A DNA stretch of 64,000 nucleotides from Octopus sinensis. Taxonomy: Eukaryota. The stretch is from contig NW_021831989.1 in the NCBI RefSeq assembly GCF_006345805.1, positions 310,001 through 374,000 of the forward strand, written 5' to 3'. The translations under genes and the position numbers were made by a program. Below the pieces are notes generated by a model. It was not told where the DNA came from. It made no database searches and worked only from the letters and a program-made list of their open reading frames with translations. This document shows positions 2,903 through 63,200 of the stretch, in pieces; the first letter of the stretch is position 1; each line of letters begins with the position of its first letter.

Positions 2903-5900
2903 ATGAACGACCTCGTCGGTATCTTTACTAGAAAACACTACCACAATATATCTCCCGATGAACATAATCAAAATCGTCACATTACTTTATTCAAACTAAC
3001 AGCAATGAGTATATTTACTACAAATACAAACAGGCACTGGATGTATCATCGGAGCAGGGGTGTACATGGCCTCAGGACTAATGATCAATCAACAAGCCGG
3101 GCCTGCCACGATCATATCCTTTCTACTTGCCGCCCTGATGACCATTCTAATTGGTGGTCCTCAGTTCCCTTACTTTGAAGGATTGATGTATGCGGAAGTG
3201 GGAACTCGAATGCCCCTATCTGGGTCCTTCTATGCATTCGGGTATGCCGTGTATGGCGAAATGACTGCCTTTGTCATTGGATTTTTGTTTTTTCTGTCAT
3301 ACTTGTTTGGTATCATTTGATCTCAACTGTAGGTGCGGTCATAACTGTCAAGTCACTGTCCTTTTATATTGACTCATTGTGCAATTACGTAATTTCCAAT
3401 TACTTTTCAACGTTCAGAATAACCCAGTTGGAATATTTTGAGAGTATTTTTAATCCACTACCAATCGGAGTCTCTTTTATCTTTTCGGGTTTTGTCCTTT
3501 GATCATTTCAGTCCTTTTTCTATTCAAGTCTAAGGATTCTAGCAAGGTTGCAGTCTATTTAGTGTCCGTCAATATAATTGTCCTCATCACCGTGGTCATT
3601 GGAGGCGCGAATTCGACGGAAATTCAAAATTGGAGTCTACCTCCTGTTTTTTACGGAAAACATATATTTAGACCAGTGATTCTCAGCTTTTTTGCTCAGG
3701 GGCCGCAAATTAAAAAAAAAAATTTACAGGGGCCGCAAATAATTTTTAAGAATTATTTATTAACCAAATAATCAAAATTAGGTTTAATTCTACTTGTTGA
3801 AGTACGTAACAAATCACTCAGATGAGTATCAGTCAATCTGCTGCGAACTTTGTTTTAATTCGAACGAGTTTACTAATGTCGATTCGCAGACATATGTTGA
3901 TCCAAACATTGCTAAATTTTTCTTTGCATTATTGACTAAATTCGGAAATCGGTTCTCTGGAATTCTCGAATAAAAGTCAATTATTGAAATGTTGTTGAAC
4001 AAACTTTTCAGTTCAACATCATTTTGCAAATCAATCAATTCCAGTTGGTAAATCCCGGAAACCTCCTCACTTTTCATAATTAATGGAGATGCAAATAATC
4101 TCATTGAATTTGCACCTTCTTTAAAGCTCTGTCAGCTTAAATTAAATACTAAAAACCTGAAATCTTGCATCAAATTGCAAATTTAAATCTTCAATTATTT
4201 TTAAATATTTATCAGTTGGAGAAAAAATCTGTGTTCCTTTAGTTTCTCCGTGAAGTGAATTCAATGAAAAAAATTCTTCGTATACTCGAAAGTCAGATGT
4301 TACTCCCCTTATAAACACTACTAATTGTTCGATATCTGAATATCTTTGGAACAATCAAGCGCAAAAGATAATATTGAAAATCTTTACAAATTCTAAAAAT
4401 TACAAAACAATTTGCATACTGTAAAAGTTCGTTAATCAGATTATCAGATATATCACTGACTCTTCTAGTAACAGTATCGTTACTTAGAGGTAACTTGTGT
4501 GCAATATCGAAAACAGCGGGCGAACAACATTCCGATGCAAATATTTCGATTGCCGTTTTATATAATTCGCCATCAGAATAAGGCTTCATATTTTTAGCCA
4601 ATAGGTAACTAATTTTGTATGATGCCAGGTTAATATTAGACGAAATGTGCCACTTTTGAAAGTAAATGATCGTTTTAAATAATCTTCTTTCATTTGTTTT
4701 AGTTTTTTCGTCCGAGAAACACCAGTGAATTTGTCATAAAGAATAGAGTGGAAACGGTAGTGCCGTTCGATTGTATACGTTTTTAGAGTTGCAATAATAG
4801 AATGGCATATTAGGCAAAGAGCCTTTCCATTGATCTCAATAATGAAATATTTTTCTTCCCAGATGTGTTGAAAAATCCTATTTTCCTCGGAAAGTTTTCG
4901 ACAACGTTTAGAATCAGACATCACAACAACAAATAAAAAACGTGACATTTTTGTCACCGGCCACAACTGTTACTCCGCCAGATGTGTTACACAACATCAA
5001 ATTGTCAAGTTGGAAAAAACTTAAAACATGAATCCTTTGGTATATTTCTATGAAATCAAAGAAAACTTATAAATTTTTAAAAAATATTGATGTTTTTTTA
5101 AATTACAAATACACGTAAAAATGCGTTTAGTGCAAGTAACAAAGGAAGACTTAGAATTACTTAAGGAACTTAAGAGCAATCCTGAGCTCGTATTCGTCAG
5201 CAGGACGCTTTCGCGGATGCAAAGATCAAGACTACTGAAATTAGCAAATAAATTTGATTTTTTGGATGGAGCTCCATATATCACTAAAGATGGACTTAAA
5301 TTAAGATTTTTCTGCAGCGATGAAGCTGAACTTAAAGATAAATATATTGAAGTTTGCATAATAAATGTTTATTTCAATTGGCTGAACATAATTTGAATCA
5401 TTTTGGTCGAGACCGGTTGTTTTCAAAATTGGCGCGCTTATACCACGGAATATCACGTGCAGAGATCAATCGTGTCATAAAACGATGTATTCCTTGCCAG
5501 GTTTTAAGTTTTTTTTATTAATTTTTTAGTCAAAAAAATCATTGGCTACTAAACCCCCAGTTACGCCGATCATTGCAAGGCGGAGTCGCGATCGGTATAT
5601 CGCCGATTTAGTGGACCTAAGGAGATATTCAGATATTAATGATTCTTATAACTGGGTACTTTTGGCTATATAAAGATTAGATTCTTGTAATTGTCGATTC
5701 TTTTTCGAAATTCGCGATAGTTGAGTTATCTTTTACCAAAAGAGCTCATGAAATTGCTTCGTTATTTCAGAACATTGTTGGCAGCTGATAAAATGGCTCA
5801 GAGAAGAAAATGGAAGTATGACGAGGCTACTTTTAGTGTAGGAGAGATAGTAATCTTAAGGTATTTGGGATGTATAAACATGTAATTAGGCAAGATAATG

Positions 5901-7719
5901 ACGCTAACAAACGACAATATCCACTTTATGATGGATTAGAGATGGTGAAATACACAATTGTGGCAAAAGACGATTTTGTAGTAACAATACAAAGTGAGAC
6001 AGGTGACATGTATGAGAAAATACATGTTTCACGCTTAATTAAAATTGGGAATGATCCTTCTTTTTTGTGATTCCTTGATAGAAAACGTTTTAAACTAATA
6101 AGAGGCTTTTAAAATTTTTTTTATTAAAAAAAAAGAATAATTATTTAATAAAAAAAAGATATGGATAAGCCAAAATTAAATAGATTGCTAAATAATTTAA
6201 AACTCATATTTTACACGGTATGTTGGTTTTTGGGAAAAAATTCATGTTTCAGTCCAAATTTTTTCTATTCAGAAAAGCATATTTTTGCGAACAATTAGGT
6301 TATGCTTTGTATTAATTTTTAATTTTAAAAGTTTTTATTTCTATTTATATGAATTTTTAGTGTAACATATCTGGCGGAGTAACAGTTGTGGCCTGTGACA
6401 TTTTTTTATTCATAAAATTTAAAAATATTAAATTAAAAAATAAAACATTTATAAAACCTAGGGGCCGCAAATTAAATCCTAGGGGCCGCACTTGAGAATC
6501 ACTGATTTAGACCAACAAATCTGCGGGGGAGGACTTTCACGGAAACGGAGGATTTGTCCCTTACGGCTTCTCAGGGATTTTTGTGGGGACTTTGGCAGCT
6601 TTTTTTTGTCTGTCGGGGGTTGAAATCATTGCCGGGATCGGTTAAATGTTCCCTAGTTATCCCACAGCCGGGGAAGTGAAGAACCCAACGAGGACCATTC
6701 CCCTGGCTACTGTGTTATGCATAGTGGTGGCCACAATGGCCTATGTCTCTACCACCGTGGTGATCTCTTTGATGATACCTTACTATGAAATCGACATCAA
6801 GGCACCTTTCTTGGTGGCATTTCTTCACAAGGGGAAACCAGTTCTGGGTTATGTAATCTCCGTTGGTTGCATCTGCGGCATGCTTTCAAAGTCAAAAAGT
6901 TATCTTACATTTAGTCTGTTCGGGTTGGTTTTTACGGGGTCTCGTTTAATGTACTCAATGACGTTGGATGGGTTTTTTCCGAGGATCCTTTTTCACCCCG
7001 ACGACGAAGTAATGGTTAGGAGAGCCTGTCTAGTCCTATGTGCTTTAACTGGTACAATTACTCCCTTATTTAAGGGGTTTTGTCTTTGTTTTTTACCGCT
7101 GAATCAGCTTTGAGTATTTGTGAGGTTTGCTTGCTTGTGCCCACAATCATTTTGAATGTTATTATAGTCAACGTTCGGTTCATTTTTTGCTTATTTTTAG
7201 TTATTCTAACAAACCAGGCAAAGATTTCCTCTCAGTGAAACAAATTAAAGTTGCCAGAGTTATGACTAGTATATCTAGTATTTATACATGTATATATTTT
7301 GTAGCACTATGTACGTTGTTTATTGCAATTTTGATGAAATTTCCGATTCAGAATTTGGTTATTTATTCTTCGTTGATGGGGCTGCTGGGTATAGGCTTGA
7401 TTGGGTGCCTCGTCGTTTTGCAGAGGATCCCAAAACAAGGAGAAAGAGGGGTTTATAAGGTTCCATTTTTTAATATTTGTAGACACCGTTTGTGTCTGTT
7501 CTTCCGGTTATTTCGAATTTTTTTATTTTTGTTCTTTTGGTGTACGCGGATGGGAAACAGTGGATATTATTTGGTGGAATATTTATAATTTGTATTTATT
7601 TTCTGGTTATTTTAGTTTTTGTTATTTATATTTTGTCAACTATCATTTCAATAATGAAACAAAGTTCGGAAATAAAGAAATGTAAAAATAATCAAAAAAA
7701 TCAATCCAGTGAACTTTAA
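2903..7719 (+). CDS. SLC7A1-like: Cationic amino acid transporter (SLC7A1-4/CAT family), multi-exon, with a 2.9-kb transposon-filled intron
   Basis: Spliced translation gives GTGCIIGAGVYMASG, AGPATIISF, YAEVGTRMPLSGSFYAF, GGFVPYGFSG, GEVKNPTRTIP, SRLMYSM..DG and TPFVSVLP, colinear with CAT proteins. The small introns are 22-27 nt GT-AG and I found no disabling lesion in the exons. Confidence 0.92.
3674..6504 (-). mobile_element. Buster/SPIN-type hAT DNA transposon, internally deleted and degraded
   Basis: TIRs CAGTGATTCTCA / TGAGAATCACTG. 8-bp TSD ATTTAGAC at 3666-3673 and 6505-6512 (central TA). Frameshifted GTF2IRD2-like transposase pieces at 4586-4966, 4293-4601 and 3829-4104 (MFGSTYVCE). 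Confidence 0.95.
4952..6400 (+). mobile_element. Ginger-like (integrase-type DDE) DNA transposon nested in the hAT
   Basis: About 40-bp TIRs TGTCAC(C/A)GGCCACAACTGTTACTCCGCCAGAT(G/A)TGTTACA and an apparent 4-bp TSD TTTT. The spliced gene gives HFGRDRLF...CIPCQ (HHCC), RYIADLVDL..YNWILVIVDSFSKF and a GPY/F-like C-terminus; the middle of the core is deleted. Confidence 0.85.
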
Positions 7720-8173
7720 TCATAACATTGTTTCTATTTTTCTAATGAATTATTCATGTGTAGATTTTAGACAAAAACTGACAATATTTAAATCAAAAAG
7801 AAAAAAGCTAGATGTTAGCTAGAGTAAGTGGCTGAAAGGGAAGTCGAGAGTCTAAGGGTCAGATCAATGACACTGCACTGCGTATTGAATGATAGTTTTG
7901 CGAAGTACGGCGATCGACATTCGCTGAAAGAGCCAACTCGTCCCTTCGATTGTCTATTTTCAAGGAGATTCAGGAATACCTTTCCATTTGGTATTTTTGA
8001 TAAAACTTGTATTTTATAAAGGAATTAGTACATTTTCTCCATGTTCGGTGAAATAATCGTTCATTGCCCGATTGGCCGGAGCTCTGGGGTCCATTCGCAA
8101 AATATGGCCAAATAATTTCCACCGGCCTCCAACGATTTCTTGAGACAACGGCGTAGCATCGTAATGTCTATAC

Positions 8174-8860
8174 CAGCGGTTCTCAAATGCGGCCCCCAGG
8201 ATTTTTTTTGCGGCCCCTCTAGAGTAACTAACTTTTTTAATTTTTTAATAATGTTCAAATTTAATTATTTTTCTTTCAAAAAAAAAATTATTCATTCTTA
8301 AGGTTAAACATATCCATAATTGGTGATTTCATTAATCAATTTGAAGCACGTTTTGGGGTACATTTATATAAATTTAATTTTTAGAATTTTAAAGAATTCC
8401 TTCCTTTAATGAAAATATTCGAAACTCCATTCAGCGTGGAAATTAAGGATGCGCCTGCAAAGTTTCAACTAGAACTCATTAATTTACAACATTAATTTGG
8501 GTGGTCTAATCACCAAAAAAACAGGTGATCCGCGGGAGACGTCGTGGCTCTTCCAGAGGATTTCGTGTGCAATTGTCCGCGGAAATTCACACGCTATCCT
8601 AGGGTCATACTAATTAATTCAATCGATTTTGTTATTTACAACATGATATAGAACTGGCGGCATTGTTCAAAAATGCGTCCATTATTAATTTTACGAATTA
8701 ATTCCTCAAGACAAATGCATATATGAATCTACATATTTATGCGAATCAATATTTAGTAAAATGGAAAATATAAAAATATATATAATATTTTTTGTGCGGC
8801 CCGCGAAGCTAATCTTAATTATCGATTTGGCCCTTGAGCTAAAAAGGTTGAGAACCCCTG
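8174..8860 (+). mobile_element. Non-autonomous Buster hAT inserted in the RTE
   Basis: TIRs CAGCGGTTCTCA / TGAGAACCCCTG; TSD GTCTATAC at 8166-8173 and 8861-8868; a deletion derivative of the 12283-13651 element. Confidence 0.95.
8492..8633. mobile_element. 142-bp GC-rich structured insertion with a 10-bp target duplication
   Basis: ATTTACAACA flanks both sides (8482-8491, 8634-8643). The sister hAT copy has a single ATTTACAACA near 13123. Confidence 0.75.
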
Positions 8861-12282: not shown

Positions 12283-13651
12283 CAGCGGTTCTCAAATGCG
12301 GCCCGCAGGATTTTTTTTGCGGCCCCTCTAGAGTAACTAACTTTTTTAATTTTTTAATAATGTTAAAATTTAATTATTTATTGATCGTTCCAAAGATATA
12401 ACCGAAAATAGTTTCGATCAATTAATATGGCATCACTGCATAATTCACCAGGAAAATCTTATCGCCAAGTCCATTAAAATGGAACATGTTTCCAAAAAAG
12501 TCGTTAATATCGTTAATTGGATACGCTCAAAAGCGCTCAATCACCGATATTTTAAATCTTTTTTGGAAGAAGTTGATGCTGAGTATGGAGATGTTATTTT
12601 TCATACTGAAGTGAGGTGGTTAAGTCGTTCGAAATGCCTTAATATTTTATTAAAGGTTCTATAAATTGCTTCCAGAAATTAAGGAGTTTACCAAAGACAA
12701 AGTAATTTTCGATGAACTTTACGATGAAAGATGGATTGCCGATTTGGCTTTTTATGTTGATTTAACCACGCATTTGTCGGATCTCAATGTTGAATTACAA
12801 GGAAAAGGCAAACTCTGTTATCAGTTATATGGATATATTTCTTCGTTTATCGAAAAATTATATTTATGGATGACTTCCCTTAAAGAGGGAGATACATCTC
12901 ATTTTTATTCACTATCTGAAAAAAACGAAGGCGCTGTTTATGAAAAATACATATCCATAATTGGTGATTTAATTAATCAATTTGAAGCACGTTTTGGGGT
13001 ACATTTATATAAATTTAATTTTTAGAATTTTAAAGAATTCCTTCCTTTAATGAAAATATTCGCAACTCCATTCAGCGTGGAAATTAAGGACGCGCCTGCA
13101 AAGTTTCAACTAGAACTCATTAATTTACAACATGATATAGAACTGCGGCATTGTTCAAAAAAGCGTCCATTATTAATTTTTACGAATTAATTCCTCAAGA
13201 CAAATTCAAAAATATAACACACAATGTATATATGAATATATCAATGTTTGGATCTACTATTTATGCGAATCAATATTTAGTAAAATGATTCGCATAAAAA
13301 ATAAATATCGTAACAAACTCACGGATAATCACTCGAGTCAGCTTTTACGAACTTCTTTGACTTTACTTATTCCGGATTTCAAAAACTTAATAAACAAATA
13401 ATACTTTCTTTTTAGTTACAACGCCTTTTTTTAGATTTTTTAGCTTGTAATTCTTTATAAAGGAAATGGAAATTAAAAAAAGAAAAAACAGAGTCCAAAA
13501 ACTCATTACGCATCAGCAGTGGCTGCACTTCAGATTGCAAGCGAGTTACCGGCTTGGAAAATATAAAAATATATAAAATATTTTTTTGCGGCCCTCGAAG
13601 CTAATCTTAATTATCGATTTGGCCCTTGAGCTAAAAGGTTGAGAACCCCTG
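12283..13651 (+). mobile_element. Buster hAT, internally deleted
   Basis: Same TIRs as 8174-8860; TSD TTTTAGAC at 12275-12282 and 13652-13659; transposase pieces NWIRSKALNHRYF...HTEVRWLSR and W..DLAFYVD.TTHL..LN..LQG. Confidence 0.95.
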
Positions 13652-13744
13652 TTTTAGACAAAAACTAACAATATTTAAAACAACTAGAGTAAGTAGCAAC
13701 ACTTTTATTCAATGCATTCGAGAAATTATTTTTTGGCTTTCAGT

Positions 13745-14414: not shown

Positions 14415-16355
14415 CTACTTCTTTGAATTGAGCCGTTTTATGATTTCCTACAATGCCTAGTCAATGTGATACTTTGCATCGAGTTATGCAATCGTTTTTG
14501 GATCTCCCGACCAGACATGCCGCCACTTTCTCCCATCTGTCCTCCGTAGAAGCAGGGTACGTCTTCAACGCCTGCTCCAATATCGCCTGTTCTTCCGCCG
14601 ACCAACTCACATTTTCAGTTTTTCCAACTTCCAAATTCTTCTGACTGTTGAACTTCTTCAAAAACTCGTTGGAATCCCCCAAAGACATCAAATCCTTTGA
14701 CATCCTCATGACCTCTTTGATGGAGTAGTCATACCCCTTTGAGTTGACATTCCGTGTAATATGCTGCCATCTACAGTACTCCCAACACTCCGACCTGTCC
14801 TTATACCCCTGCGGGAACACTTTGGTGGCCTTAGTCAAACACTGCAATGCCTCGACAGTCCACTTCTCCACCTTCCCATTGGTGCCATTAACTAATGCCT
14901 GACACTCCTCGAACTATCAATAGTCACTGCTAATACACCTCAGAATATAACCCCTCTCGAAATTCGTCCTCCTTCCCTTCTGAGTAGGCCTTGTTCACTT
15001 TAGTCAGTCTAGAATACACACTCAGACTATACTTGGCTAGATTAACACGGGCACTATCCAATGTCAGTTTGTTGAAGAATTCACACAATTTGATGTTATT
15101 GGGACAATCAATATTCTCTAATAGTCATTCGGACTCACCTTTATGTTTTGGAGGAGAGTAGACCTCTCGGACTGAAATCTCTTAATATGATCTTCTGCCC
15201 TCTAGAATGAACCACAAACAGTCAACCTCAACCGAAGAAGTCGTCAGTAAAGAATATTCCTGGAAAGTACATTATTAGTCAATACAATGCGAGTAGACTG
15301 AGTTCTTTGTTGCTCTTTTTTCGACTTTTTCAGTTCTTGACGGTCTTTTCGCTGTTGCTGCTGAAAATTCTTTACTCGAATGTCACGTGCATATGCATCA
15401 TCTACACACACTAGTCAACACTGGTAGGACCAACTAGTTTCCGGATTCGGGCAGTCTCTCGCTTTTTGTTAGCAGTTCTCTCAGCTTTGTTGTCCTTGTC
15501 GATTGCACGTCGTTGATATCGGCTAAATATAGTCCACAAATCAGTACTTTTCTCCCTGTTCTTTATCTTCCTTGTCCAAATATGAAAACTCGCGCCAACT
15601 GTCAAAAGCATACCAAAAATTGTAGAAAGTTGTAATTTCCTTATAACTTGAGTTCAGATCCCCGAATTTAGGGACAGGCTGAATATTGGACCACCTAATT
15701 CAATTAACAACCAATTAATTTATATTTTAATTATATAAATTAATTAAAAATATTTAGTATATTAATAAATAATCATAATTACGTAACCTGCTATTGTTTT
15801 CAAAAGCGCGGGAATAGATCAAGTAAAAATCTTCCCGCTTAACCTCTGTAGGGACAGGAATGCCATCATCATTAAAGGGATCCACAGAATCATAAGATCT
15901 CCTCTTGGCCGGATTCCCCAGAACATCAAATGCTGCATTTAAGCCACAAAAATGTACATTTATTAAGACAAGACGTCAATTTAGACAATTTGCTCTCCTC
16001 AATGCTTCGTTTTTTGTCTGGATGGAATTGTAGGAGTCTTTGACGGTCTAAATTTAGTAAGAAAGCTCACAGCAGTTCTTTATTCGGTCAAAAGTGGCCC
16101 TCCAACGGACGTTTTTCAGTCCTAGGACTGCATAGTGGTCGATTTCCTTTAGAATTAGTGAGAGAAACAGACTTTCCAGTTGGACACATCAAAGTCGATT
16201 CCGGGAGATGGATTGAGGAGAAAGTCCACGGAATAGTCAGAATTAAAGTAGTCTTCGTCGGACAGGTTTTTATAAAAGGGCGAAAACTTGTCTATATAGC
16301 CAAAGCATGTAAGCATGATCTTTTCATTTCGAGGAATGTACTTATCCAACTCCAT
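14415..16355 (-). CDS. DNAJC2: DnaJ homolog subfamily C member 2 (MPP11/zuotin)
   Basis: DHYAVLGL...HPDKKR J domain, [27 protein letters not shown], and two C-terminal SANT/Myb domains ([17 protein letters not shown]...RWEKVA). Mostly 23-26 nt introns plus one of about 140 nt. Confidence 0.95.
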
Positions 16356-19375: not shown

Positions 19376-20931
19376 TTGTTATCGAATATATTTAATCCCA
19401 ATACAAGCCTGATATTAACCTCGACGTCTGAGAAAACTATACCTAAACTGCTAAAACAAGATGGATCCCCTGCATCTCATGAAGAAATCCCGAACATATT
19501 TGCTGATAGTCTCAAAAGAATACAAGAAGTCAATCCGGATACAAATCTATCTGATTCAGCTTTGTTTGATATGGAAAAAGAGTTGGAAGACAATCTTAGC
19601 TCATTACCAATGTGCTCGGAATCTATAACGTGCAAAGACGTGGAAAATGCAGTTAGATACTCCAAAAATAACGCTCCGGGAAAGGACAAGATAACCATGC
19701 GCATGTTCAAAGAAGCTCCCAAGCAACTTTACGAATATTTGGGATGTCTCTTCTCCCGCAGTGTGAGCTTGGGATACGTCCCTTCTTCATGGAAACTGAC
19801 GGAGGTAAGGATGATACGGAAGCCTGGAAAACCTGGTTACTTGGCGACAAGTTATAGGCCTATAAGCCTAATTCCTACCATCAGTCGAATAATGGAAAGG
19901 GTAATGTTTGAACGACTCTCTGAACACGTCGAGAGAAATGGTTATCTCAAAGACGTGCAGTGGGGCTTTCGGAGGGGTCGTTCCTGTGCTGACTGTCTTT
20001 ATACACTCAATTCGTCGATTGTAAAGGCTCTGGATTTCAAAGAGTGTCTGACAATTGTGTCTCTAGACATCTCAAAAGCCTTTGATATGGTTTGGCACCT
20101 CGGTCTCCTTAGACATCTGGCGAAGTGTCACATAGACAAAGGACTATTCCTATGGCTAAAAGACTTCCTCCGCGACAGGCGCTCTGTGATAAGCTTTCTG
20201 AACTATGACTCGGATGAACTGAAACTTAAAAGAGGCGTCCCTCAAGGATCAGTCCTCAGTCCTCTATTATTCAACATTGTGATGAGCAATCTGCCGTCTC
20301 CTGTCAACACACGGACGGAAATTTTGATATACGCCGATGATGTTGTAATCCTTGACATTTCATCGAAACCTTATCCGAACAACAAAGGATTATATCATAT
20401 ATGAATACAGTGGAGCAATGGTGCGATGAAAATATGTTCATTATTGCGCGTGAGAAGTCCGCATTACTGAGAATCACAGAAGCAGAAATTTAATAAATTT
20501 ACCGTGCCTGATCAAGAACATACCTCGACAAAACTCAATTAAATATCTTGGCTTGTTCATCGATGAAAAGGGAAACTATCTCGAAAACGCAAAATTAAGT
20601 AAAAGGAAAGCAACTAATGCTCTGTTCTGCCTGAGGAAGTTAAATTTGGAGCCTGATACTTTCCTCTACGTTTTCAATACGGTGATCCTACCGGGACTAC
20701 TATACGGAAAAGAGGGATGGTACTTCTCTAAAAGAAGGACACCATCTTAACTAAATTTGAAAAGTCTCGCAGGCTCGCTTTGAAGCTTGCTTACCACCAA
20801 AAAGTTGAAGATCCAATCCCCCTGTGGCTTGAAAGTAAATCCTCCATGGTCGGTGAAACTGTCGAAAAAGCTATAAGTGGTTATAAATCCAACTCAATTG
20901 TCACTGGGACGTACCTGCAGAGGTAGAAAAG

Positions 20932-28230: not shown

Positions 28231-28743
28231 TATTATTATTATTATAACACATTCCGTAGGAACATAAACAAAGTTATAATCCCACACGTGTCACAAACGA
28301 AACAATCTTCTGGACCATCCTTGTCCATGCCCCTCTGTTGCGAGCGAGGTCCCGCAAAGATTCTAGGTCTTCCCAGTTTTTGAAACTTTTGCCATGAAGT
28401 TTGAGATCCTTCTCCAGAACTGCCGGAAGAGTGGATCTAGGTCTTCCACGATATTTGTCTCCATGTTCGGAGAAATAATCGTCCATTGCCCGATTGGCCG
28501 GAGCTCTGGGGTCCATTCGCAAAATATGGCCAAATAGTTTCCACCGGCCTCCAACGATTTCTTGAGACAACGGCGTAGCATCGTAATGTTTATACAGTGA
28601 TAGATTGTTAATTTTTGATGGCCAGTTTATTCCGTGTAAAAGACGTAGTTGTTTACGGTGGAAAGAGTCTATAGTCTTCAGTTCAGTGTCCGAGATCCCC
28701 CATGTTGACGAGTTGTATAGTAGAACAGGCTTTACGAATGCAT
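28231..28743 (-). mobile_element. RTE LINE, 5'-truncated, with a (TAA)n tail
   Basis: RWKLFGHILRM...RGRPRSTL...VTRVGL*, 3' UTR, and a TAATAATAATAA tail; inserted beside a hAT-like end (CAGTGTTTCTTAACC, about 28167). Confidence 0.92.
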
Positions 28744-48069: not shown

Positions 48070-48968
48070 ACTATATAGAATAGAATAGTGTTTATTGAGC
48101 AAAAAGAAAAACAAAAACAAAAACAAGGAAGAAATCATCGGCGGGGAGATAAAAACAAGGCACCGAAGTGTCTCTTTCCATGCGTATCCCCAATACTAGT
48201 CATGTTTGACGACAATTCTCCAAGACCATCCGGATCGTGGGCACAGAGGATTCTTGTGAGTCTTTTAACCTTCCGTCAAGTTGTACTCCGTAAGCCAATT
48301 TCATAGCGAAACGTCTTGTCTTTTCCAACTGTTCGATCAGGTAGTCACTCTCCTCCGTACCGTACCAGCCCTCGTAGACATATGTGAGGACTGGCTGCAC
48401 ACACATTTTGTATACGTAGATGTACGTTTCCGGATCCAGATGGAACCTGGTTAAGCTTTTGAGGATCCTCACACTCCTCTTTCTCTGATTTGCTATATGC
48501 TCTACGTACGAGCCACGACAGTTGATGGTTGCTCCCAGGTAAGAAAGATTTTTGCTTTTCGGGAGATCCATCACATAGCTACTCATCGCATATGCACACG
48601 ACTCCGCATAGCGACTCCCTCTCCGCAACCATGAAATGGTGCTCTTCTCCGGTGCTAGGGTCAAACCCTTCTCTATAGTCCACATCTTTAGCGTTGCAAT
48701 GTATGATTTCAGTCGTCTCCAAGACTGCGATATTTTTTTCGAGGTATCCATGACCAGGATATTGTCAGCATAGATAACGAGCTTGCCAGTACGTGTCGAC
48801 GGCAGAGGAATGTCCGCCAAGAAGAGGTTGAACAGAAGTGGACTCAAGATAGATCCCTGCGGGACTCCCCTTCTAAGTTCCACACACCCCGATAGGCGGT
48901 TTCCACAGCGGACAAATGATTGTCTTCCTGACAAGAAGCTCTCCAGCCATCGATAGGTCTTTATCCCT
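48070..48968 (-). mobile_element. Jockey-like LINE, 5'-truncated
   Basis: GVPQGSILSPLLFN, IYADN and YLGA; 3' UTR ending AATAAACACTATTCTATTCTA; same family as 10.6 kb and 62-63 kb. Confidence 0.92.
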
Positions 48969-49056: not shown

Positions 49057-49129
49057 CGACCACGATGGGATTCGAACCCACAATCTTCTGGTTCGAAGCC
49101 AGACGCCTTATCCGTTAGGCCACGCGGCC
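49057..49129 (-). tRNA. tRNA-Arg (anticodon TCG)
   Basis: GGCCGCGTGGCCTAACGGATAAGGCG-TCTGG-CTTCGAA-CCAGA-...GGTTCGAATCC; cloverleaf with A and B boxes, followed by a T5 terminator. Confidence 0.97.
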
Positions 49130-50804: not shown

Positions 50805-53011
50805 CAGTGAATCCTCGCAATTGGCCATTTTTGGTACATAGAGATTTTATGGCCAATTGAGAAAATGGCCAATTTGAAAAAAATCAATATTAAAAAATAA
50901 AATAAACATTTTAATTTTATTAAAATAAAATCAATCCTAATTCCTTTTTATTTGCTCTTTTTACATTTTCTTTGTATTTTCTTATTGCAGTAATCAGCGA
51001 AACATCATCTCATTTCTGCATTACAGTAAAGTTTTCTGCATTACAGTAAGATATTAAGGAATCATTCAAAAAACCACCTAAAAATTGGTTTCCAATTAAT
51101 ACCTTTAGACTCTACAGTACCGCTCAAATGTTTCGGACCACCCTATTTTTCTCAATTTCCAAGTCAATCCTAAATATTTTTATACGGTTCTTTAGAGAAA
51201 CTTATTAGATAAGCTTAAACACATTTATTCTATTTTAAAAACTTGGACAGATATTCATGTTTGGCGCAATTTTAAAATTATCGATTTTATACTCGATCAT
51301 ATTTCCGGACCAGTTTAAAAAAAACCGAAAATTTATTAAACTTATAAAAAGTTAATAATTAATATTTCCTCCGTTGTTCGTTATAACAGCATTTATTCGC
51401 TCTGGAAGTGAATTGTATAATTTTTCAATGTACGAATTATCAATCTCGTACCAAATTTTTTGGTCAAATTCCAGAGCTCTGGAAGATCTTTTGGTTCCAG
51501 ATCATAAAGTTTTTGTTTTAGTACCGACCACATATTTTCAATAATATTCAGTTCGGGTGACTGGCTCGGCCAAGTTTCTAAGATTTTTATTTGTTTCCTT
51601 TGAAAAAAATTCATTGTCGACATGGACCGATGGGAAGGAGCGCCGTCTTGCTGGAGATACATGGTCTCATCATAAAAATTTTCGAGTCCAACATTTATAA
51701 TTCTCTGATACTCTGCGGAATCAACATTTTTAATGCATAAGACAATGTTTCTCCATCCATTTGCAGCAATAGCTCCCCAGACCATAATGCTAGGAGAAAA
51801 TTTTCGTGTTTTTAAACAATATTTTGAGTCAAATCTAGAGTTTGGTGGCCTTCTAACATAATTTTTTGTGTTTGAATGCAAATTTATTTTGCATTCATCA
51901 CTAAAAATAATTTTACCCCAATCATTTTGGCTCCAAGTTAATTTCTCAATGCACCAATTTTTTCTAGCCTTTTTATGGCATATGGAAAGACTTGGTTTTG
52001 GGCATTGCTTTCGCCCATTCAAATTATTTCTTTGTAGGCATCTTTTAATTGTATTTGTGCTTACAATAGAATTTAATTTCATATCAAATTTAATTTGATT
52101 TGCCGTTTTTGTGGGGTCTGCTTTCGAAATTCTCACTAATTTGCGTTCAGATCTTGGGGATAACAATCTCGGTCGACCAGATTTGGGTCTGTCGGAATAT
52201 AGTCCAACGGATGAATATCTGGAAATTGTTCTTTGAACAGCAGTTTTGGATATTTTTAATTTTTCGGCAATTTCTCTTTGTGAAGCTCCATCTTTAAAAA
52301 AAGTGATGATAGCGACCCGATCAACCAGTGAAACACGCGGCATTTGTTATTTATTAGTCTTTTGTTTTTAATTGAATCAAAAATTATTTAAATTTAAAGA
52401 GATTTAACTGGTTCGAAACATATGATTGCAACTGGTCCGGAACATATGATCGAGTCAAAAATCAATTATATTCAATTGGCGCCAAACAAAATATATTTAA
52501 AGAAAATTTTAGAATAGAATAAATGTATTTAAGCTTATCTAATAAGTTTCTCTAAAAACCGTATAAAAATAATTTAGGATTGACTTGGAAATTGAAAAAT
52601 AGGGTGGTCCGAAACATTTGAGCGGTACTGTATTGTATCCATCCATTCGATCAATTTTTCTTCAAGCGTAGGAAATTTTGGTTTGTGAGCAGCTTTATAC
52701 GAAATTTTTGATAGATTTCGAATCCCGTAAAATAGAGTCTTTATTAAGCATTAATTATTGATCGTCTTTCTCGAGATCGTCTTGTGGAATAAATGTGAGA
52801 ATCTGTCAGCCAGAAGCTGACACGAAACACTGTCATTTTTTCCTTTGTAGTTTATAATTTGTGGTGTTTTTTCAAAAAAGTGAGCCGAGTATACGTCCAC
52901 GAGAAATTTTATAAGACATGTGATTAAAAAAATAGTTTATTTTCTAATTAAAAAAAATAATAATTTAAAAATTGGCCAATTTGCGAGGTGGCCAATTTGC
53001 GAGGATTCACA
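50805..53011. mobile_element. pogo-like non-autonomous element hosting the Tc1 insertion
   Basis: Left TIR TA|CAGTGAATCCTCGCAATTGGCCA; right end TGGCCAATTTGCGAGGATTCAC (slightly degenerate). Confidence 0.8.
51115..52630 (-). mobile_element. Full-length Tc1 element with long IR/DR-type TIRs and a near-intact DD35E transposase (52343 to 51352)
   Basis: About 200-bp TIRs starting CAGTACCGCTCAAATGTTTCGGACCACCC, TA TSD; paired-like HTH, GRPR, FSDE, QQDGA and IENMW. Restoring one A in the run at 51456-51461 gives the canonical tail IWYEI...LPERINAVITNNGGNINY*. Confidence 0.97.
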
Positions 53012-57010: not shown

Positions 57011-57134
57011 CCATTAGGTTGATTAGCTTTAAAAGCTAATTATTTTCTGAATTTAAAAAAATCAATGAGGGGAGTTAACTTCGATTCGAAATCGAAGATC
57101 GAAAATCAAAATCGAAGTGTAAAAAAATAAAAGA

Positions 57135-57206
57135 GCCCTTGTAGCTCAGTGGTAGAGCACTGGTCTCGTAAACCAGGGGTCGAGGGTTCGACTCCCTCCG
57201 GGGGCT
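57135..57206 (+). tRNA. tRNA-Thr (anticodon CGT)
   Basis: GCCCTTGTAGCTCAGTGGTAGAGCA-CTGGT-CTCGTAA-ACCAG-...GGTTCGACTCC; cloverleaf. Confidence 0.96.
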
Positions 57207-57264
57207 TACTTTCTTTGATATAAATAACTTTTAAGATATATTTAGTTCTTTTTTGTTCTGCTTA

Positions 57265-62109: not shown

Positions 62110-63200
62110 ATTATCTTCTTTAGGACCTCGGGATGTCAGCGAGAAAAAGATTGAATAACAGCGGGCTCAGTATAGAACCCTGAGGGACACATCTTTTGAG
62201 ATCCACACTGTCCGATAGTCGGTTTCCGCACAGTACATAAGATTTCCTCTCGTTGAGATAACTCTTTAGCCATTTGAATGTTTTTTCACCTGCACCAGTC
62301 TCCAAAACTTTTTCCAGGAGTCCAAGGTGCCAGACGCAGTCAAAAGCCTTAGATAAATCCAAGCACACAGCGGTTATGCAAGATTTATTGAGTATTGCCC
62401 AAGAAAGTTCCCTTTTTAGTTCATTCAGGCAGTTTCCTGTGGATTTGCCAGGACGAAAACCCCATTGGACAACGGAAAACAGATTATTTTTTAACATGTA
62501 ATGAGAGTCTTTCAAAAATTATTTTTTCCATAATCTTCGAAAAAGTGCAGATCAGGCTTATAGGTCTGTAGTTTTCTGCTAGGAGACTTGTTTTCCAGGG
62601 TTTCGGAATCATACGAACGACTGTGCACTTCCAGGTTGGCGGAAGATAACCAAGGGTAAAACTAACGTCGAAAAGCATAGTTAGAGCCCGTAGGAGGATT
62701 TTCGGAGCCTTCTTAAGAAGGTACACAGATATGTAGTCGAATCCAGGGGGCTTGTTTTTCAGCTCTGCAATCGCTTCTTGTGTCTCTTTTTCGGTAATAG
62801 TCTCGCATAGAGGTCCATTCACAAGATTTAGAGATTCTAGCCTTGAAGTGACTTTCTCAAAGGTCTTTTGTGGAATAATTGATTCAGGTTCGACTTTTTG
62901 GGTTTTTCCCAGCTGCCTTCTTAGTTCATCAGGAACAAGATCGGAGGGAATATACTTTTCATCTTGCCTCTTTAATACAATATTGTCGCCTTTTCCTTCC
63001 GTGGTGTTCAGGTGCTGATACGCCTTCCAAAACTTTGGATTTCTCTTATCCAGCATTCGGCATTCCTTCCTCCTTATGTTTCTATTTTCTTCTTGCCATT
63101 TCTACTATCATCATCTTGAGATTGTTGATTTCAATTTTTAGCTGGTTTCTGACCCCCACGTTGGAGCATCTCCTTTTGTGATTTTGAAGGGCTGGATGGC
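62110..63200 (-). mobile_element. Jockey-like LINE RT, truncated and frameshifted
   Basis: PPGFD, YRPISL, QWGFRPGKS, LDLSKAFD and VPQGSILSPLLFN; same family as 48.2-48.9 kb. Confidence 0.92.

What the first reader, a model, noticed from the sequence alone, without database searches (positions are those of the whole stretch)
3646..6512. A hAT target-site duplication copied the 3' splice acceptor and seems to have turned a 26-nt intron into a 2.9-kb intron
Seen: the CAT gene has a phase-0 donor at 3646 (after NWSLPP). The Buster TSD ATTTAGAC is the acceptor itself (TTTAG|AC), so one copy lies at 3666-3673 and another at 6505-6512. Removing the element restores a normal 26-nt intron. Splicing 3646 to the distal AG (6510) gives an in-frame TNKSAGEDFHGNGGFVPYGFSG, whereas the proximal AG hits a stop after 13 codons. 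The hAT and the Ginger nested in it are both decayed, yet all downstream CAT exons are intact. Inference: the gene has stayed under selection, so a spliceosome that normally handles ~25-nt introns must skip an intact AG 26 nt from the donor and use one 2,865 nt away. This resembles introner-type splice-site co-option and could give a productive versus NMD isoform switch.
Basis: partly seen in the sequence, partly recalled or inferred. Interest (0 to 1): 0.82.

Follow-up and report, generated by a model that had tools for sequence, protein, structure and literature searches.

The report
Young transposon insertion on splice acceptor
A very recently inserted cut-and-paste (hAT) transposon sits exactly on the 3' end of a 26-base intron of an amino-acid transporter gene in a tiny-intron animal (probably a dicyemid parasite of octopus) and duplicates the splice acceptor; it is most likely an ordinary, probably gene-disabling insertion allele and gives no evidence for unusual long-range splicing.

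Summary
The sequence observation holds in every detail. The donor GT is at 3646. A 2,831-bp hAT lies at 3674-6504 with 12-bp TIRs, flanked by the 8-bp duplication ATTTAGAC (3666-3673 and 6505-6512), which contains the acceptor AG. Removing the element restores a 26-nt intron. Only the junction 3645|6511 keeps the 577-aa CAT/SLC7 frame; the proximal AG gives a stop after 13 codons.

The inference [quoted passage not shown] fails. Another copy of the same hAT, on a tiny-intron contig deposited within the Octopus sinensis assembly, differs from this one by 0 substitutions in 1,377 aligned bases. That copy lacks the nested Ginger-like element and lacks the 678-bp internal deletion. It encodes an apparently complete Buster-type transposase. 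The "decay" here is therefore a deletion derivative, one nested insertion and seven one-base indels that look like assembly errors.

The insertion is younger than typical allelic divergence, so intact downstream exons say nothing about selection. The acceptor sits in the duplication because the family targets nTnTAnAn. The old 26-nt intron is untouched through exon position +4, so proximal splicing and a premature stop are the expected outcome. No RNA or population data could be reached.

The parts
2903..7721 (+). CAT/SLC7-type amino-acid permease gene. It has 11 exons and encodes 577 aa. Nine introns are 23-27 nt; the tenth is the 2,865-nt interval 3646-6510.
   Evidence: Gene model built (intron 9 corrected to 7178-7200). 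Pfam AA_permease E 6e-38. 32% identity to Anneissia CAT2 over 426 aa, continuous across the junction. Only one copy in the window.
3512..3645 (+). Exon 5, ending ...NWSLPP (codon 215, phase 0).
3646..3671 (+). The original 26-nt intron (GTTTTTTACGGAAAACATATATTTAG). It is fully intact, including the candidate branch A's and the proximal AG at 3670-3671.
   Evidence: Its context is identical to the pre-insertion site through exon position +4 (D19).
3666..3673 (.). Left copy of the 8-bp target-site duplication ATTTAGAC.
3674..6504 (-). Non-autonomous Buster-type hAT element, 2,831 bp, with transposase remnants on the minus strand (3829-4966). It carries a 678-bp internal deletion at about 4215 relative to the L003 copy.
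   Evidence: TIRs. zf-C2H2_12 E 1e-6 and a weak hAT dimerisation hit. Homologs are GTF2IRD2-like / FAM200-ZBED5 proteins. 0 substitutions in 1,377 nt against L003.
3674..3685 (+). Left TIR CAGTGATTCTCA. The family consensus is CAGTGATTCTCAAG; this copy lacks one A.
3711..3713 (+). TAA stop, reached 13 codons after the proximal AG if that acceptor is used. The predicted product is 215 + 13 aa.
4952..6400 (+). Nested Ginger-like deletion derivative, 1,449 bp. It has 41-nt TIRs beginning TGTCA and a 4-bp duplication TTTT (4948-4951 and 6401-6404). Integrase remnants are on the plus strand.
   Evidence: I1. Integrase_H2C2 E 7e-6. Absent from the otherwise identical L003 hAT copy. Translation.
6493..6504 (-). 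Right TIR, the reverse complement of CAGTGATTCTCA.
6505..6512 (.). Right copy of the duplication ATTTAGAC. The distal AG is at 6509-6510. TAG at 6508-6510 is in frame with exon 6, so a phase-0 acceptor further upstream would read straight into that stop.
6511..6640 (+). Exon 6 (TNKSAGEDFHGNGGFVPYGFSG...), the first of six intact downstream exons.
8174..8860 (.). Related hAT deletion derivative e2 (duplication GTCTATAC), shown for comparison. Its unoccupied paralogous site is at about 28585-28600.
12283..13651 (.). Related hAT deletion derivative e3 (duplication TTTTAGAC). It is 96-98% identical to e2 but has a different internal deletion.

Best explanation
This is a very young insertion of a non-autonomous Buster-type hAT transposon into the last 6 bases of tiny intron 5, plus the first 2 bases of exon 6, of a CAT/SLC7 transporter gene. 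The hAT is a deletion derivative that also carries a nested Ginger-like fragment. The host is a tiny-intron animal, most likely a dicyemid. The family targets nTnTAnAn, so the staggered cut at ATTTAG|AC duplicated the acceptor (shown). The old 26-nt intron keeps its donor, its branch region, its AG and the first 4 exon bases. The expected main outcome is therefore normal removal of the 26-nt intron, read-through into the transposon, a stop after 13 codons, and a truncated 228-aa product or nonsense-mediated decay (inferred). That would make this a null or strongly weakened allele. The downstream exons are intact simply because too little time has passed for them to decay. The allele is probably still segregating, or heterozygous in a largely clonal parasite population (inferred).
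For: Anatomy:
- Perfect TIRs and an 8-bp duplication.
- Six insertions of this hAT group all have T at position 2 and TA at positions 4-5 of the duplication: ATTTAGAC, GTTTAAAT, GTTTAGAA, GTCTATAC, TTTTAGAC, GTCTATTC.

Age:
- The window hAT against the L003 copy shows 0 substitutions in 1,377 nt. The differences are seven 1-nt indels, one 678-bp deletion with TTG microhomology, and the nested element.
- The L003 copy aligns end to end with a 599-aa Buster-like transposase and needs only three tiny introns removed. The family therefore looks active.
- e2 and e3 are 96-98% identical but carry different internal deletions, and e2 has an unoccupied paralogous site. Deleted derivatives are evidently mobile in this genome.
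- Allelic divergence in this kind of genome is about 1.2-1.6%: heterozygosity 1.24% in D. japonicum (PMC6736024), and L001 against L002 is 98.4% identical. That exceeds the copy divergence, which has a 95% upper bound near 0.2% (my estimate).

Splicing logic:
- The proximal site equals the original site through position +4 (D19).
- No other donor/acceptor combination I tried restores the frame; the in-frame TAG at 6508-6510 blocks phase-0 acceptors further upstream (own enumeration).
- The other two host genes in the window are compact, with a largest intron of 93 nt.
- In tiny introns the conserved A's keep a fixed distance from the 5' end (PMC13644364). The first suitable AG after them is therefore the proximal one.
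Against: - No RNA or population data could be reached, so neither the splice outcome nor the allele frequency was observed.
- The assembler kept this allele.
- About one third of dicyemid introns exceed 30 nt (PMC6543705), so longer introns are spliced in these animals.
- The distal junction is exactly in frame.
- TIR and duplication copies could pair in the pre-mRNA (-27 kcal/mol) and bring the two AGs together.
- Gene conversion among transposon copies could make an older insertion look young.
- The L003 copy comes from a different deposited assembly, and I infer but have not shown that it is the same species.
Confidence: 0.65

Rival explanations
1. Tolerated insertion with long-range splicing. 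The donor at 3646 pairs at a useful rate with the distal AG at 6510. The gene stays functional, and the proximal AG yields a by-product that is degraded.
For: - The distal junction is in frame and homology runs across it.
- A branch-like CTGAT/GAGAAT sequence lies 5-15 nt upstream of the distal AG.
- Pairing of the TIRs and duplication copies (-27 kcal/mol) could loop out the element, and the nested 41-nt TIRs could fold away another 1.4 kb.
- Introns longer than 30 nt exist in dicyemids (PMC6543705), and there is a 93-nt intron nearby.
Against: - The proximal 26-nt intron is untouched and is transcribed about 2.8 kb earlier than the distal AG.
- No selection signal exists, because the insertion has 0 substitutions against its source family.
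- The same RNA pairing would bury both AGs in the helix.
- From established work on intron definition in small-intron systems (my knowledge, not tested here), enlarging a small intron usually abolishes or redirects its splicing.
Confidence: 0.2
2. Rescue at the DNA level. The element is removed from somatic DNA before the gene is needed, either by excision using the active family's transposase or through the chromatin diminution reported for dicyemids.
For: An apparently autonomous copy of the same family exists. The element keeps perfect 12-bp TIRs. Chromatin diminution and extrachromosomal circles in dicyemids are cited in PMC6543705.
Against: hAT excision usually leaves both duplication copies plus a footprint. 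That would give a roughly 34-nt intron with two AGs, or an 8-nt frameshift, and not a clean restoration. PMC6543705 itself doubts diminution of the circles. There is no evidence at this locus.
Confidence: 0.05
3. Fixed loss of a dispensable or redundant transporter gene, i.e. a newborn pseudogene and not a segregating allele.
For: The structural evidence is the same as for the main explanation. SLC7 genes are usually multi-copy in animals (general knowledge).
Against: No paralog occurs in the 64-kb window. An insertion this young is a priori unlikely to be fixed already.
Confidence: 0.08

Closest known systems
hAT (Ac/Ds-type) insertion alleles in or next to introns, where the 8-bp duplication and element ends change splice-site choice. 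This is the classical maize Ds work; I cite it from memory and did not test it here.
   Same: The superfamily is the same, and the 8-bp duplication flanks short TIRs. The element is a non-autonomous deletion derivative mobilised by an autonomous relative. The outcome for the gene depends on which splice sites around the element are used.
   Different: Here the element supplies no splice site at all. Both candidate acceptors are copies of the host's own acceptor. The host is an animal with 23-27-nt introns, so the proximal mini-intron stays complete.
Introner elements (Micromonas, Aureococcus, dinoflagellates and others; PMC9860276, PMC11282704)
   Same: It is a DNA transposon with TIRs, and a splice-site dinucleotide lies in the duplication.
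   Different: Introners create a new intron inside an exon. They bring one splice site and take the other from the duplication. They are short and occur as many near-identical introns. This element landed in an existing intron and brings no splice site. It is 2.8 kb long, and its five other copies seen here are not introns.
Buster/Charlie-clade hAT transposons and their domesticated relatives (GTF2IRD2, ZBED5, FAM200)
   Same: The protein homologs carry these names and the Pfam families FAM200-ZBED5_RNase-like and hAT dimerisation. The duplication has central TA, matching the nnnTAnnn pattern of the clade (pattern recalled from memory; 6 of 6 here).
   Different: The transposase gene of the full copy (L003) carries three host-style mini-introns of 21-30 nt.
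Tandem or duplicated 3' acceptors and first-AG choice after the branch point (general splicing knowledge)
   Same: Two identical acceptor contexts compete for one donor.
   Different: The two acceptors are 2,839 nt apart, not a few bases apart, so each would need its own branch point.

Membership tests
hAT superfamily, Buster clade | 8-bp target-site duplication flanking short terminal inverted repeats | tested here: met
   ATTTAGAC occurs twice, next to the 12-bp perfect TIR CAGTGATTCTCA. The 8-bp duplication was verified for relative e2 against an unoccupied paralogous site.
hAT superfamily, Buster clade | Target pattern nnnTAnnn (central TA) | tested here: met
   6 of 6 duplications in this group have TA at positions 4-5. 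The clade rule itself is recalled from memory.
hAT superfamily, Buster clade | Transposase with an RNase-H-like catalytic core and a C-terminal hAT dimerisation domain, related to GTF2IRD2/ZBED5-type proteins | tested here: met
   For the family: the L003 copy aligns over residues 6-589 of the 599-aa P0121, and homologs carry PF27073, PF27046 and PF05699. The window copy itself keeps only the zinc finger (E 1e-6) and a weak dimerisation hit (E 0.08), and it lacks the core.
Ginger DNA transposons | TIRs of about 40 bp or more, beginning TGTNR | tested here: met
   41-nt TIRs, 95% complementary, starting TGTCA. Criteria from PMC2836005.
Ginger DNA transposons | 4-bp target-site duplication | tested here: met
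   There are four extra T's relative to the uninterrupted L003 hAT copy. The AT-rich target fits Ginger2 better than Ginger1, which targets CCGG.
Ginger DNA transposons | Gypsy-like integrase with an H2C2 zinc finger and a DDE core | tested here: inconclusive
   H2C2 is found (E 7e-6). By eye I see only the start of the core and a C-terminal piece. No significant rve hit; the core appears deleted.
Introner elements | Insertion creates a new intron, with one splice site carried by the element and the other taken from the duplication or exon | tested here: not met
   The donor at 3646 and both AGs are host sequence. The intron existed before the insertion, because removing the element restores a 26-nt GT-AG intron.
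Introner elements | Many similar copies, each forming an intron in a different gene | tested here: not met
   The five other copies seen are: e2, inside a LINE remnant; e3; L003, flanked by sequence that looks non-coding (not searched); and L001/L002, upstream of a squalene monooxygenase gene. None is an intron. The sample is small.
Introner elements | The element is spliced out of mRNA | not testable with these tools
   No transcript data for this organism could be reached.
SLC7 cationic amino-acid transporter (CAT) subfamily | AA_permease fold, with closest similarity to animal CAT proteins over the full length | tested here: met
   Pfam AA_permease E 6e-38. Top hits are animal CAT1/2/4-like proteins at 32-37% identity. 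Substrate not tested.

The most novel reading that the evidence does not exclude
In an animal whose spliceosome is tuned to 23-27-nt introns, the donor at 3646 regularly bypasses a complete, correctly spaced AG 26 nt away and joins to an identical AG 2,865 nt downstream. Pairing of the transposon's TIRs and the two quasi-palindromic duplication copies might help. The locus would then be a natural test of how 3' splice sites are chosen in ultra-short-intron animals, and of how a mini-intron can become a long one in a single step.
Probability: 0.12. Interest if true: 0.6.

Novelty: new member of a known kind. Interest (0 to 1): 0.25.

Why it matters
As it stands, this is an ordinary young transposon insertion allele, and the argument for exceptional splicing collapses.

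It still has modest value. It marks an apparently active Buster-type hAT family in a tiny-intron animal. The family's target pattern (nTnTAnAn, here TTTAG|AC) overlaps the usual TTTAG end of that host's mini-introns, so such insertions can duplicate acceptors.

If RNA from insertion-homozygous animals ever became available, this locus would be a clean natural experiment on near versus far acceptor choice, and on whether mini-introns can be enlarged by a transposon.

It also carries a methodological warning. Broken transposon reading frames do not date an insertion, and productive junction reads cannot be interpreted without knowing whether an empty allele is present.

Tried and rejected
1. Transcript or ortholog evidence. 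A protein search with the spliced CAT found nothing above 37% identity. An exact look-up of the exon ORF 6646-7113 found no contig. A search with the neighbouring DNAJC2-like ORF, meant to reach a second haplotype, found nothing.
2. An exact scan of JGI metagenome contigs for the 27-nt empty-site sequence gave 0 hits, as expected.
3. A PDB sequence search with the hAT remnants gave no hit.
4. Ciliate germline / eliminated-sequence reading. Rejected: the best homologs are animal CATs, and glutamine is encoded by CAA with no in-frame TAA or TAG.
5. Rescue by a second splice inside the element. I enumerated the GT at 3676 and the AGs at 6496, 6482, 6461 and 6531. Each combination is out of frame or hits the TAG at 6508-6510. 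The exception is donor 3646 to AG 6531, which merely deletes 7 codons (own reading).
6. A tandem CAT paralog in the window: none.
7. Other long, transposon-bearing introns in neighbouring host genes: none. The GALNT-like and DNAJC2-like genes are compact.
8. Local RNA structure hiding the proximal AG. The predictions are similar for filled and empty alleles, so this is not informative.
9. The supplement of PMC13644364, for maximum intron lengths, is not held.
Full report
**What is there**

The plus strand from 2903 to 7721 carries a complete CAT/SLC7-type amino-acid permease gene. I built a model with 11 exons and 577 codons. Nine of its introns are GT-AG and 23-27 nt long: 3009-3033, 3154-3180, 3310-3332, 3489-3511, 6641-6667, 6891-6914, 7052-7074, 7178-7200 and 7460-7482. 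The product hits Pfam AA_permease at E 6e-38. Its best relatives are animal CAT1/2/4-like proteins at 32-37% identity.

Exon 5 ends at 3645 in phase 0 (...NWSLPP), followed by GT at 3646. The next 26 nt, GTTTTTTACGGAAAACATATATTTAG, form a normal mini-intron ending at 3671.

From 3674 to 6504 lies a 2,831-bp element:
- It has perfect 12-bp TIRs: CAGTGATTCTCA at 3674-3685 and its reverse complement at 6493-6504.
- It is flanked by the 8-bp direct repeat ATTTAGAC at 3666-3673 and 6505-6512.
- Joining 3645 to 6511 gives NWSLPP|TNKSAGEDFHGNGGFVPYGFSG, and the alignment to a crinoid CAT2 runs across this point with only a 3-residue gap.
- Using the proximal AG gives 13 codons and then TAA at 3711-3713.
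- TAG at 6508-6510 is in frame with exon 6, so a phase-0 acceptor further upstream would read straight into a stop.

**The element**

Minus-strand ORFs between 3829 and 4966 carry a Spin-doc/GTF2IRD2-type zinc finger (E 1e-6) and a weak hAT dimerisation signal. A database search returns Buster-clade proteins: GTF2IRD2-like, with the Pfam families FAM200-ZBED5 RNase-like and hAT dimerisation.

Inside it, 4952-6400 is a second element. It has 41-nt TIRs that begin TGTCA, a 4-bp TTTT duplication, and integrase H2C2 remnants. These features fit the published definition of Ginger elements (PMC2836005). Its catalytic core is missing.

**Which organism**

Introns of 23-27 nt are known among animals only in dicyemids and myxobolid myxozoans (PMC13644364). 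The hAT search unexpectedly hit proteins annotated on small contigs of the Octopus sinensis assembly GCA_006345805.1. I fetched three of those contigs (L001-L003). They are 33-36% GC, carry the same repeats as the window at 96-99% identity, and hold a compact squalene monooxygenase gene of about 1.5 kb. They are not octopus-like.

The simplest reading is dicyemid DNA, a kidney parasite of octopus, deposited with the host assembly. The window would then come from the same or a very close dicyemid. This is inference. The window's own genes are not in the searchable protein collections.

**Age of the insertion: the decisive result**

L003 12835-14895 holds another copy of the same hAT, flanked by its own duplication GTTTAAAT. 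I removed the nested element from the window copy and aligned the two globally. The result was 1,377 matched positions and no substitution at all. The differences are:
- seven single-base indels, six of them in AA/AAA runs, which look like long-read assembly errors;
- one 678-bp deletion in the window copy with TTG microhomology at the breakpoints;
- the nested element with its TTTT duplication.

The L003 copy aligns from residue 6 to 589 of a 599-aa Buster-like transposase in one frame. The frame is interrupted only by three short inserts that have GT-AG ends and lengths of 27, 27 and 21-30 nt, i.e. host-style mini-introns. It appears autonomous.

So the copy in CAT is a fresh deletion derivative of an apparently active family. 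It has not aged in place.

A related subfamily supports this. Elements e2 (8174-8860) and e3 (12283-13651) are 96-98% identical but carry different internal deletions. An unoccupied paralogous site for e2 survives at about 28585-28600 with a single GTTTATAC. Deleted hATs clearly move in this genome.

**Consequence for the selection argument**

Zero differences in 1,377 bp puts the copy divergence below about 0.2% (my 95% bound). Over the 1,091 nt of downstream coding sequence, that predicts about 2 neutral substitutions and well under one disabling change (my estimate). Intact exons are what neutrality predicts.

The copy divergence is also well below allelic divergence in this kind of genome. 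Heterozygosity is 1.24% in D. japonicum (PMC6736024), and the two haplotype-like contigs L001 and L002 are 98.4% identical. The insertion is therefore likely to sit on only one haplotype lineage.

**Why the acceptor is in the duplication**

The six duplications of this hAT group are ATTTAGAC, GTTTAAAT, GTTTAGAA, GTCTATAC, TTTTAGAC and GTCTATTC. All have T at position 2 and TA at positions 4-5, and five have A at position 7. This is the central-TA pattern known for Buster/Charlie hATs (the clade rule is recalled from memory).

TTTAG|AC, a typical end of an AT-rich mini-intron plus two exon bases, is a good match. Hitting an acceptor and copying it needs no special explanation.

**How it most likely works**

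The insertion leaves the 26-nt intron complete. The donor, the A-rich stretch, the AG and exon bases +1 to +4 are all identical to the original site (D19). In ultra-short introns the conserved A's keep a fixed distance from the 5' end (PMC13644364). The first suitable AG after them is therefore the proximal one, and it is also transcribed about 2.8 kb earlier than the distal AG.

I therefore expect splicing at 3645|3672, read-through into the hAT, and a stop after 13 codons. If the missing TIR base is an assembly error, the stop comes after 23 codons. Either way the allele would be null or strongly weakened.

I found no second splice that would restore the frame. The only in-frame alternatives are donor 3646 to AG 6510, or to AG 6531.

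Some features could help the distal site:
- a CTGAT/GAGAAT branch-like stretch 5-15 nt upstream of it;
- a possible 13+6-bp helix between the TIRs and the quasi-palindromic duplication copies (-27 kcal/mol).

That helix would also bury both AGs. The other host genes in the window are compact, with a largest intron of 93 nt, although a third of dicyemid introns exceed 30 nt (PMC6543705).

**Comparison with known systems**

This is a standard hAT insertion allele. It is not an introner. It created no intron and brings no splice site, and none of its five other copies seen here is an intron (PMC11282704).

**Limits**

I could reach no RNA, no reads and no second allele, so the splice outcome and the allele frequency remain predictions.

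One practical point matters for any follow-up. An empty allele yields exactly the same 3645|6511 mRNA as long-range splicing would. Junction counts therefore mean nothing unless the genotype is known.

**Verdict**

The finding is a new member of a known kind, and its interest is low to modest.

Noticed in passing
L003:12835-14895 (contig VCDQ01011782.1 of GCA_006345805.1): An apparently intact, autonomous copy of the same hAT. Its transposase reading frame is interrupted only by three GT-AG mini-introns (27, 27 and 21-30 nt) of the host's own style. In other words, this is a DNA transposon gene with ultra-short introns.
   Followed up: partly
L001, L002, L003 (VCDQ01005811.1, VCDQ01009840.1, VCDQ01011782.1): Small contigs deposited as Octopus sinensis look like DNA of a tiny-intron parasite (dicyemid-like). 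They are 33-36% GC, hold a compact squalene monooxygenase gene, and share repeats with the window at 96-99%. NCBI gene models there fuse hAT transposase pieces to squalene monooxygenase and name them as octopus proteins.
   Followed up: partly
window 3684, 3845, 3874, 4171, 4338, 4367, 4644: Seven one-base indels and no substitution separate the window hAT from the L003 copy. Six are in A runs. This pattern suggests unpolished long-read errors in repeats of the window's assembly. Some 'frameshifts' in transposons of this window may therefore not be real.
   Followed up: partly
window 8174-8860, with its empty site at about 28585-28600: hAT deletion derivative e2 sits inside a LINE ORF2 remnant. 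A paralogous LINE copy keeps the unoccupied site with a single GTTTATAC. e2 itself carries a further insertion of about 150 bp at about 8493-8640.
   Followed up: partly
window 7766-7796 and 13652-13690: The right flank of hAT e3, including TTTTAGAC, is 92% identical over 36 nt to sequence just downstream of the CAT stop codon. It is probably the end of another repeat family.
   Followed up: no
window 51393-52343 (-): An uninterrupted 316-aa ORF that looks like a Tc1/mariner transposase by eye (not searched against any database). If so, another possibly active DNA transposon.
   Followed up: no
window 15695-15787 (-): A 93-nt GT-AG intron in the neighbouring DNAJC2/zuotin-like gene, between ...AFENNSR and [16 protein letters not shown].... 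It is the longest ordinary intron I saw in the window's host genes.
   Followed up: yes
window 49057-49129 (-) and 57134-57207 (+): tRNA-Arg(TCG) and tRNA-Thr(CGT) genes lie among reverse-transcriptase-like ORFs. Several such ORF fragments occur at 1989-2375, 19376-20404, 48200-48934 and 62120-63056; I identified them by eye and did not search them.
   Followed up: no
window 3666-3673 / 6505-6512: The duplication UUUAGA is quasi self-complementary when G-U pairs are allowed. The two copies can therefore extend the TIR helix in RNA (-27 kcal/mol for TIR plus duplication), and both AGs would lie inside that helix.
   Followed up: partly
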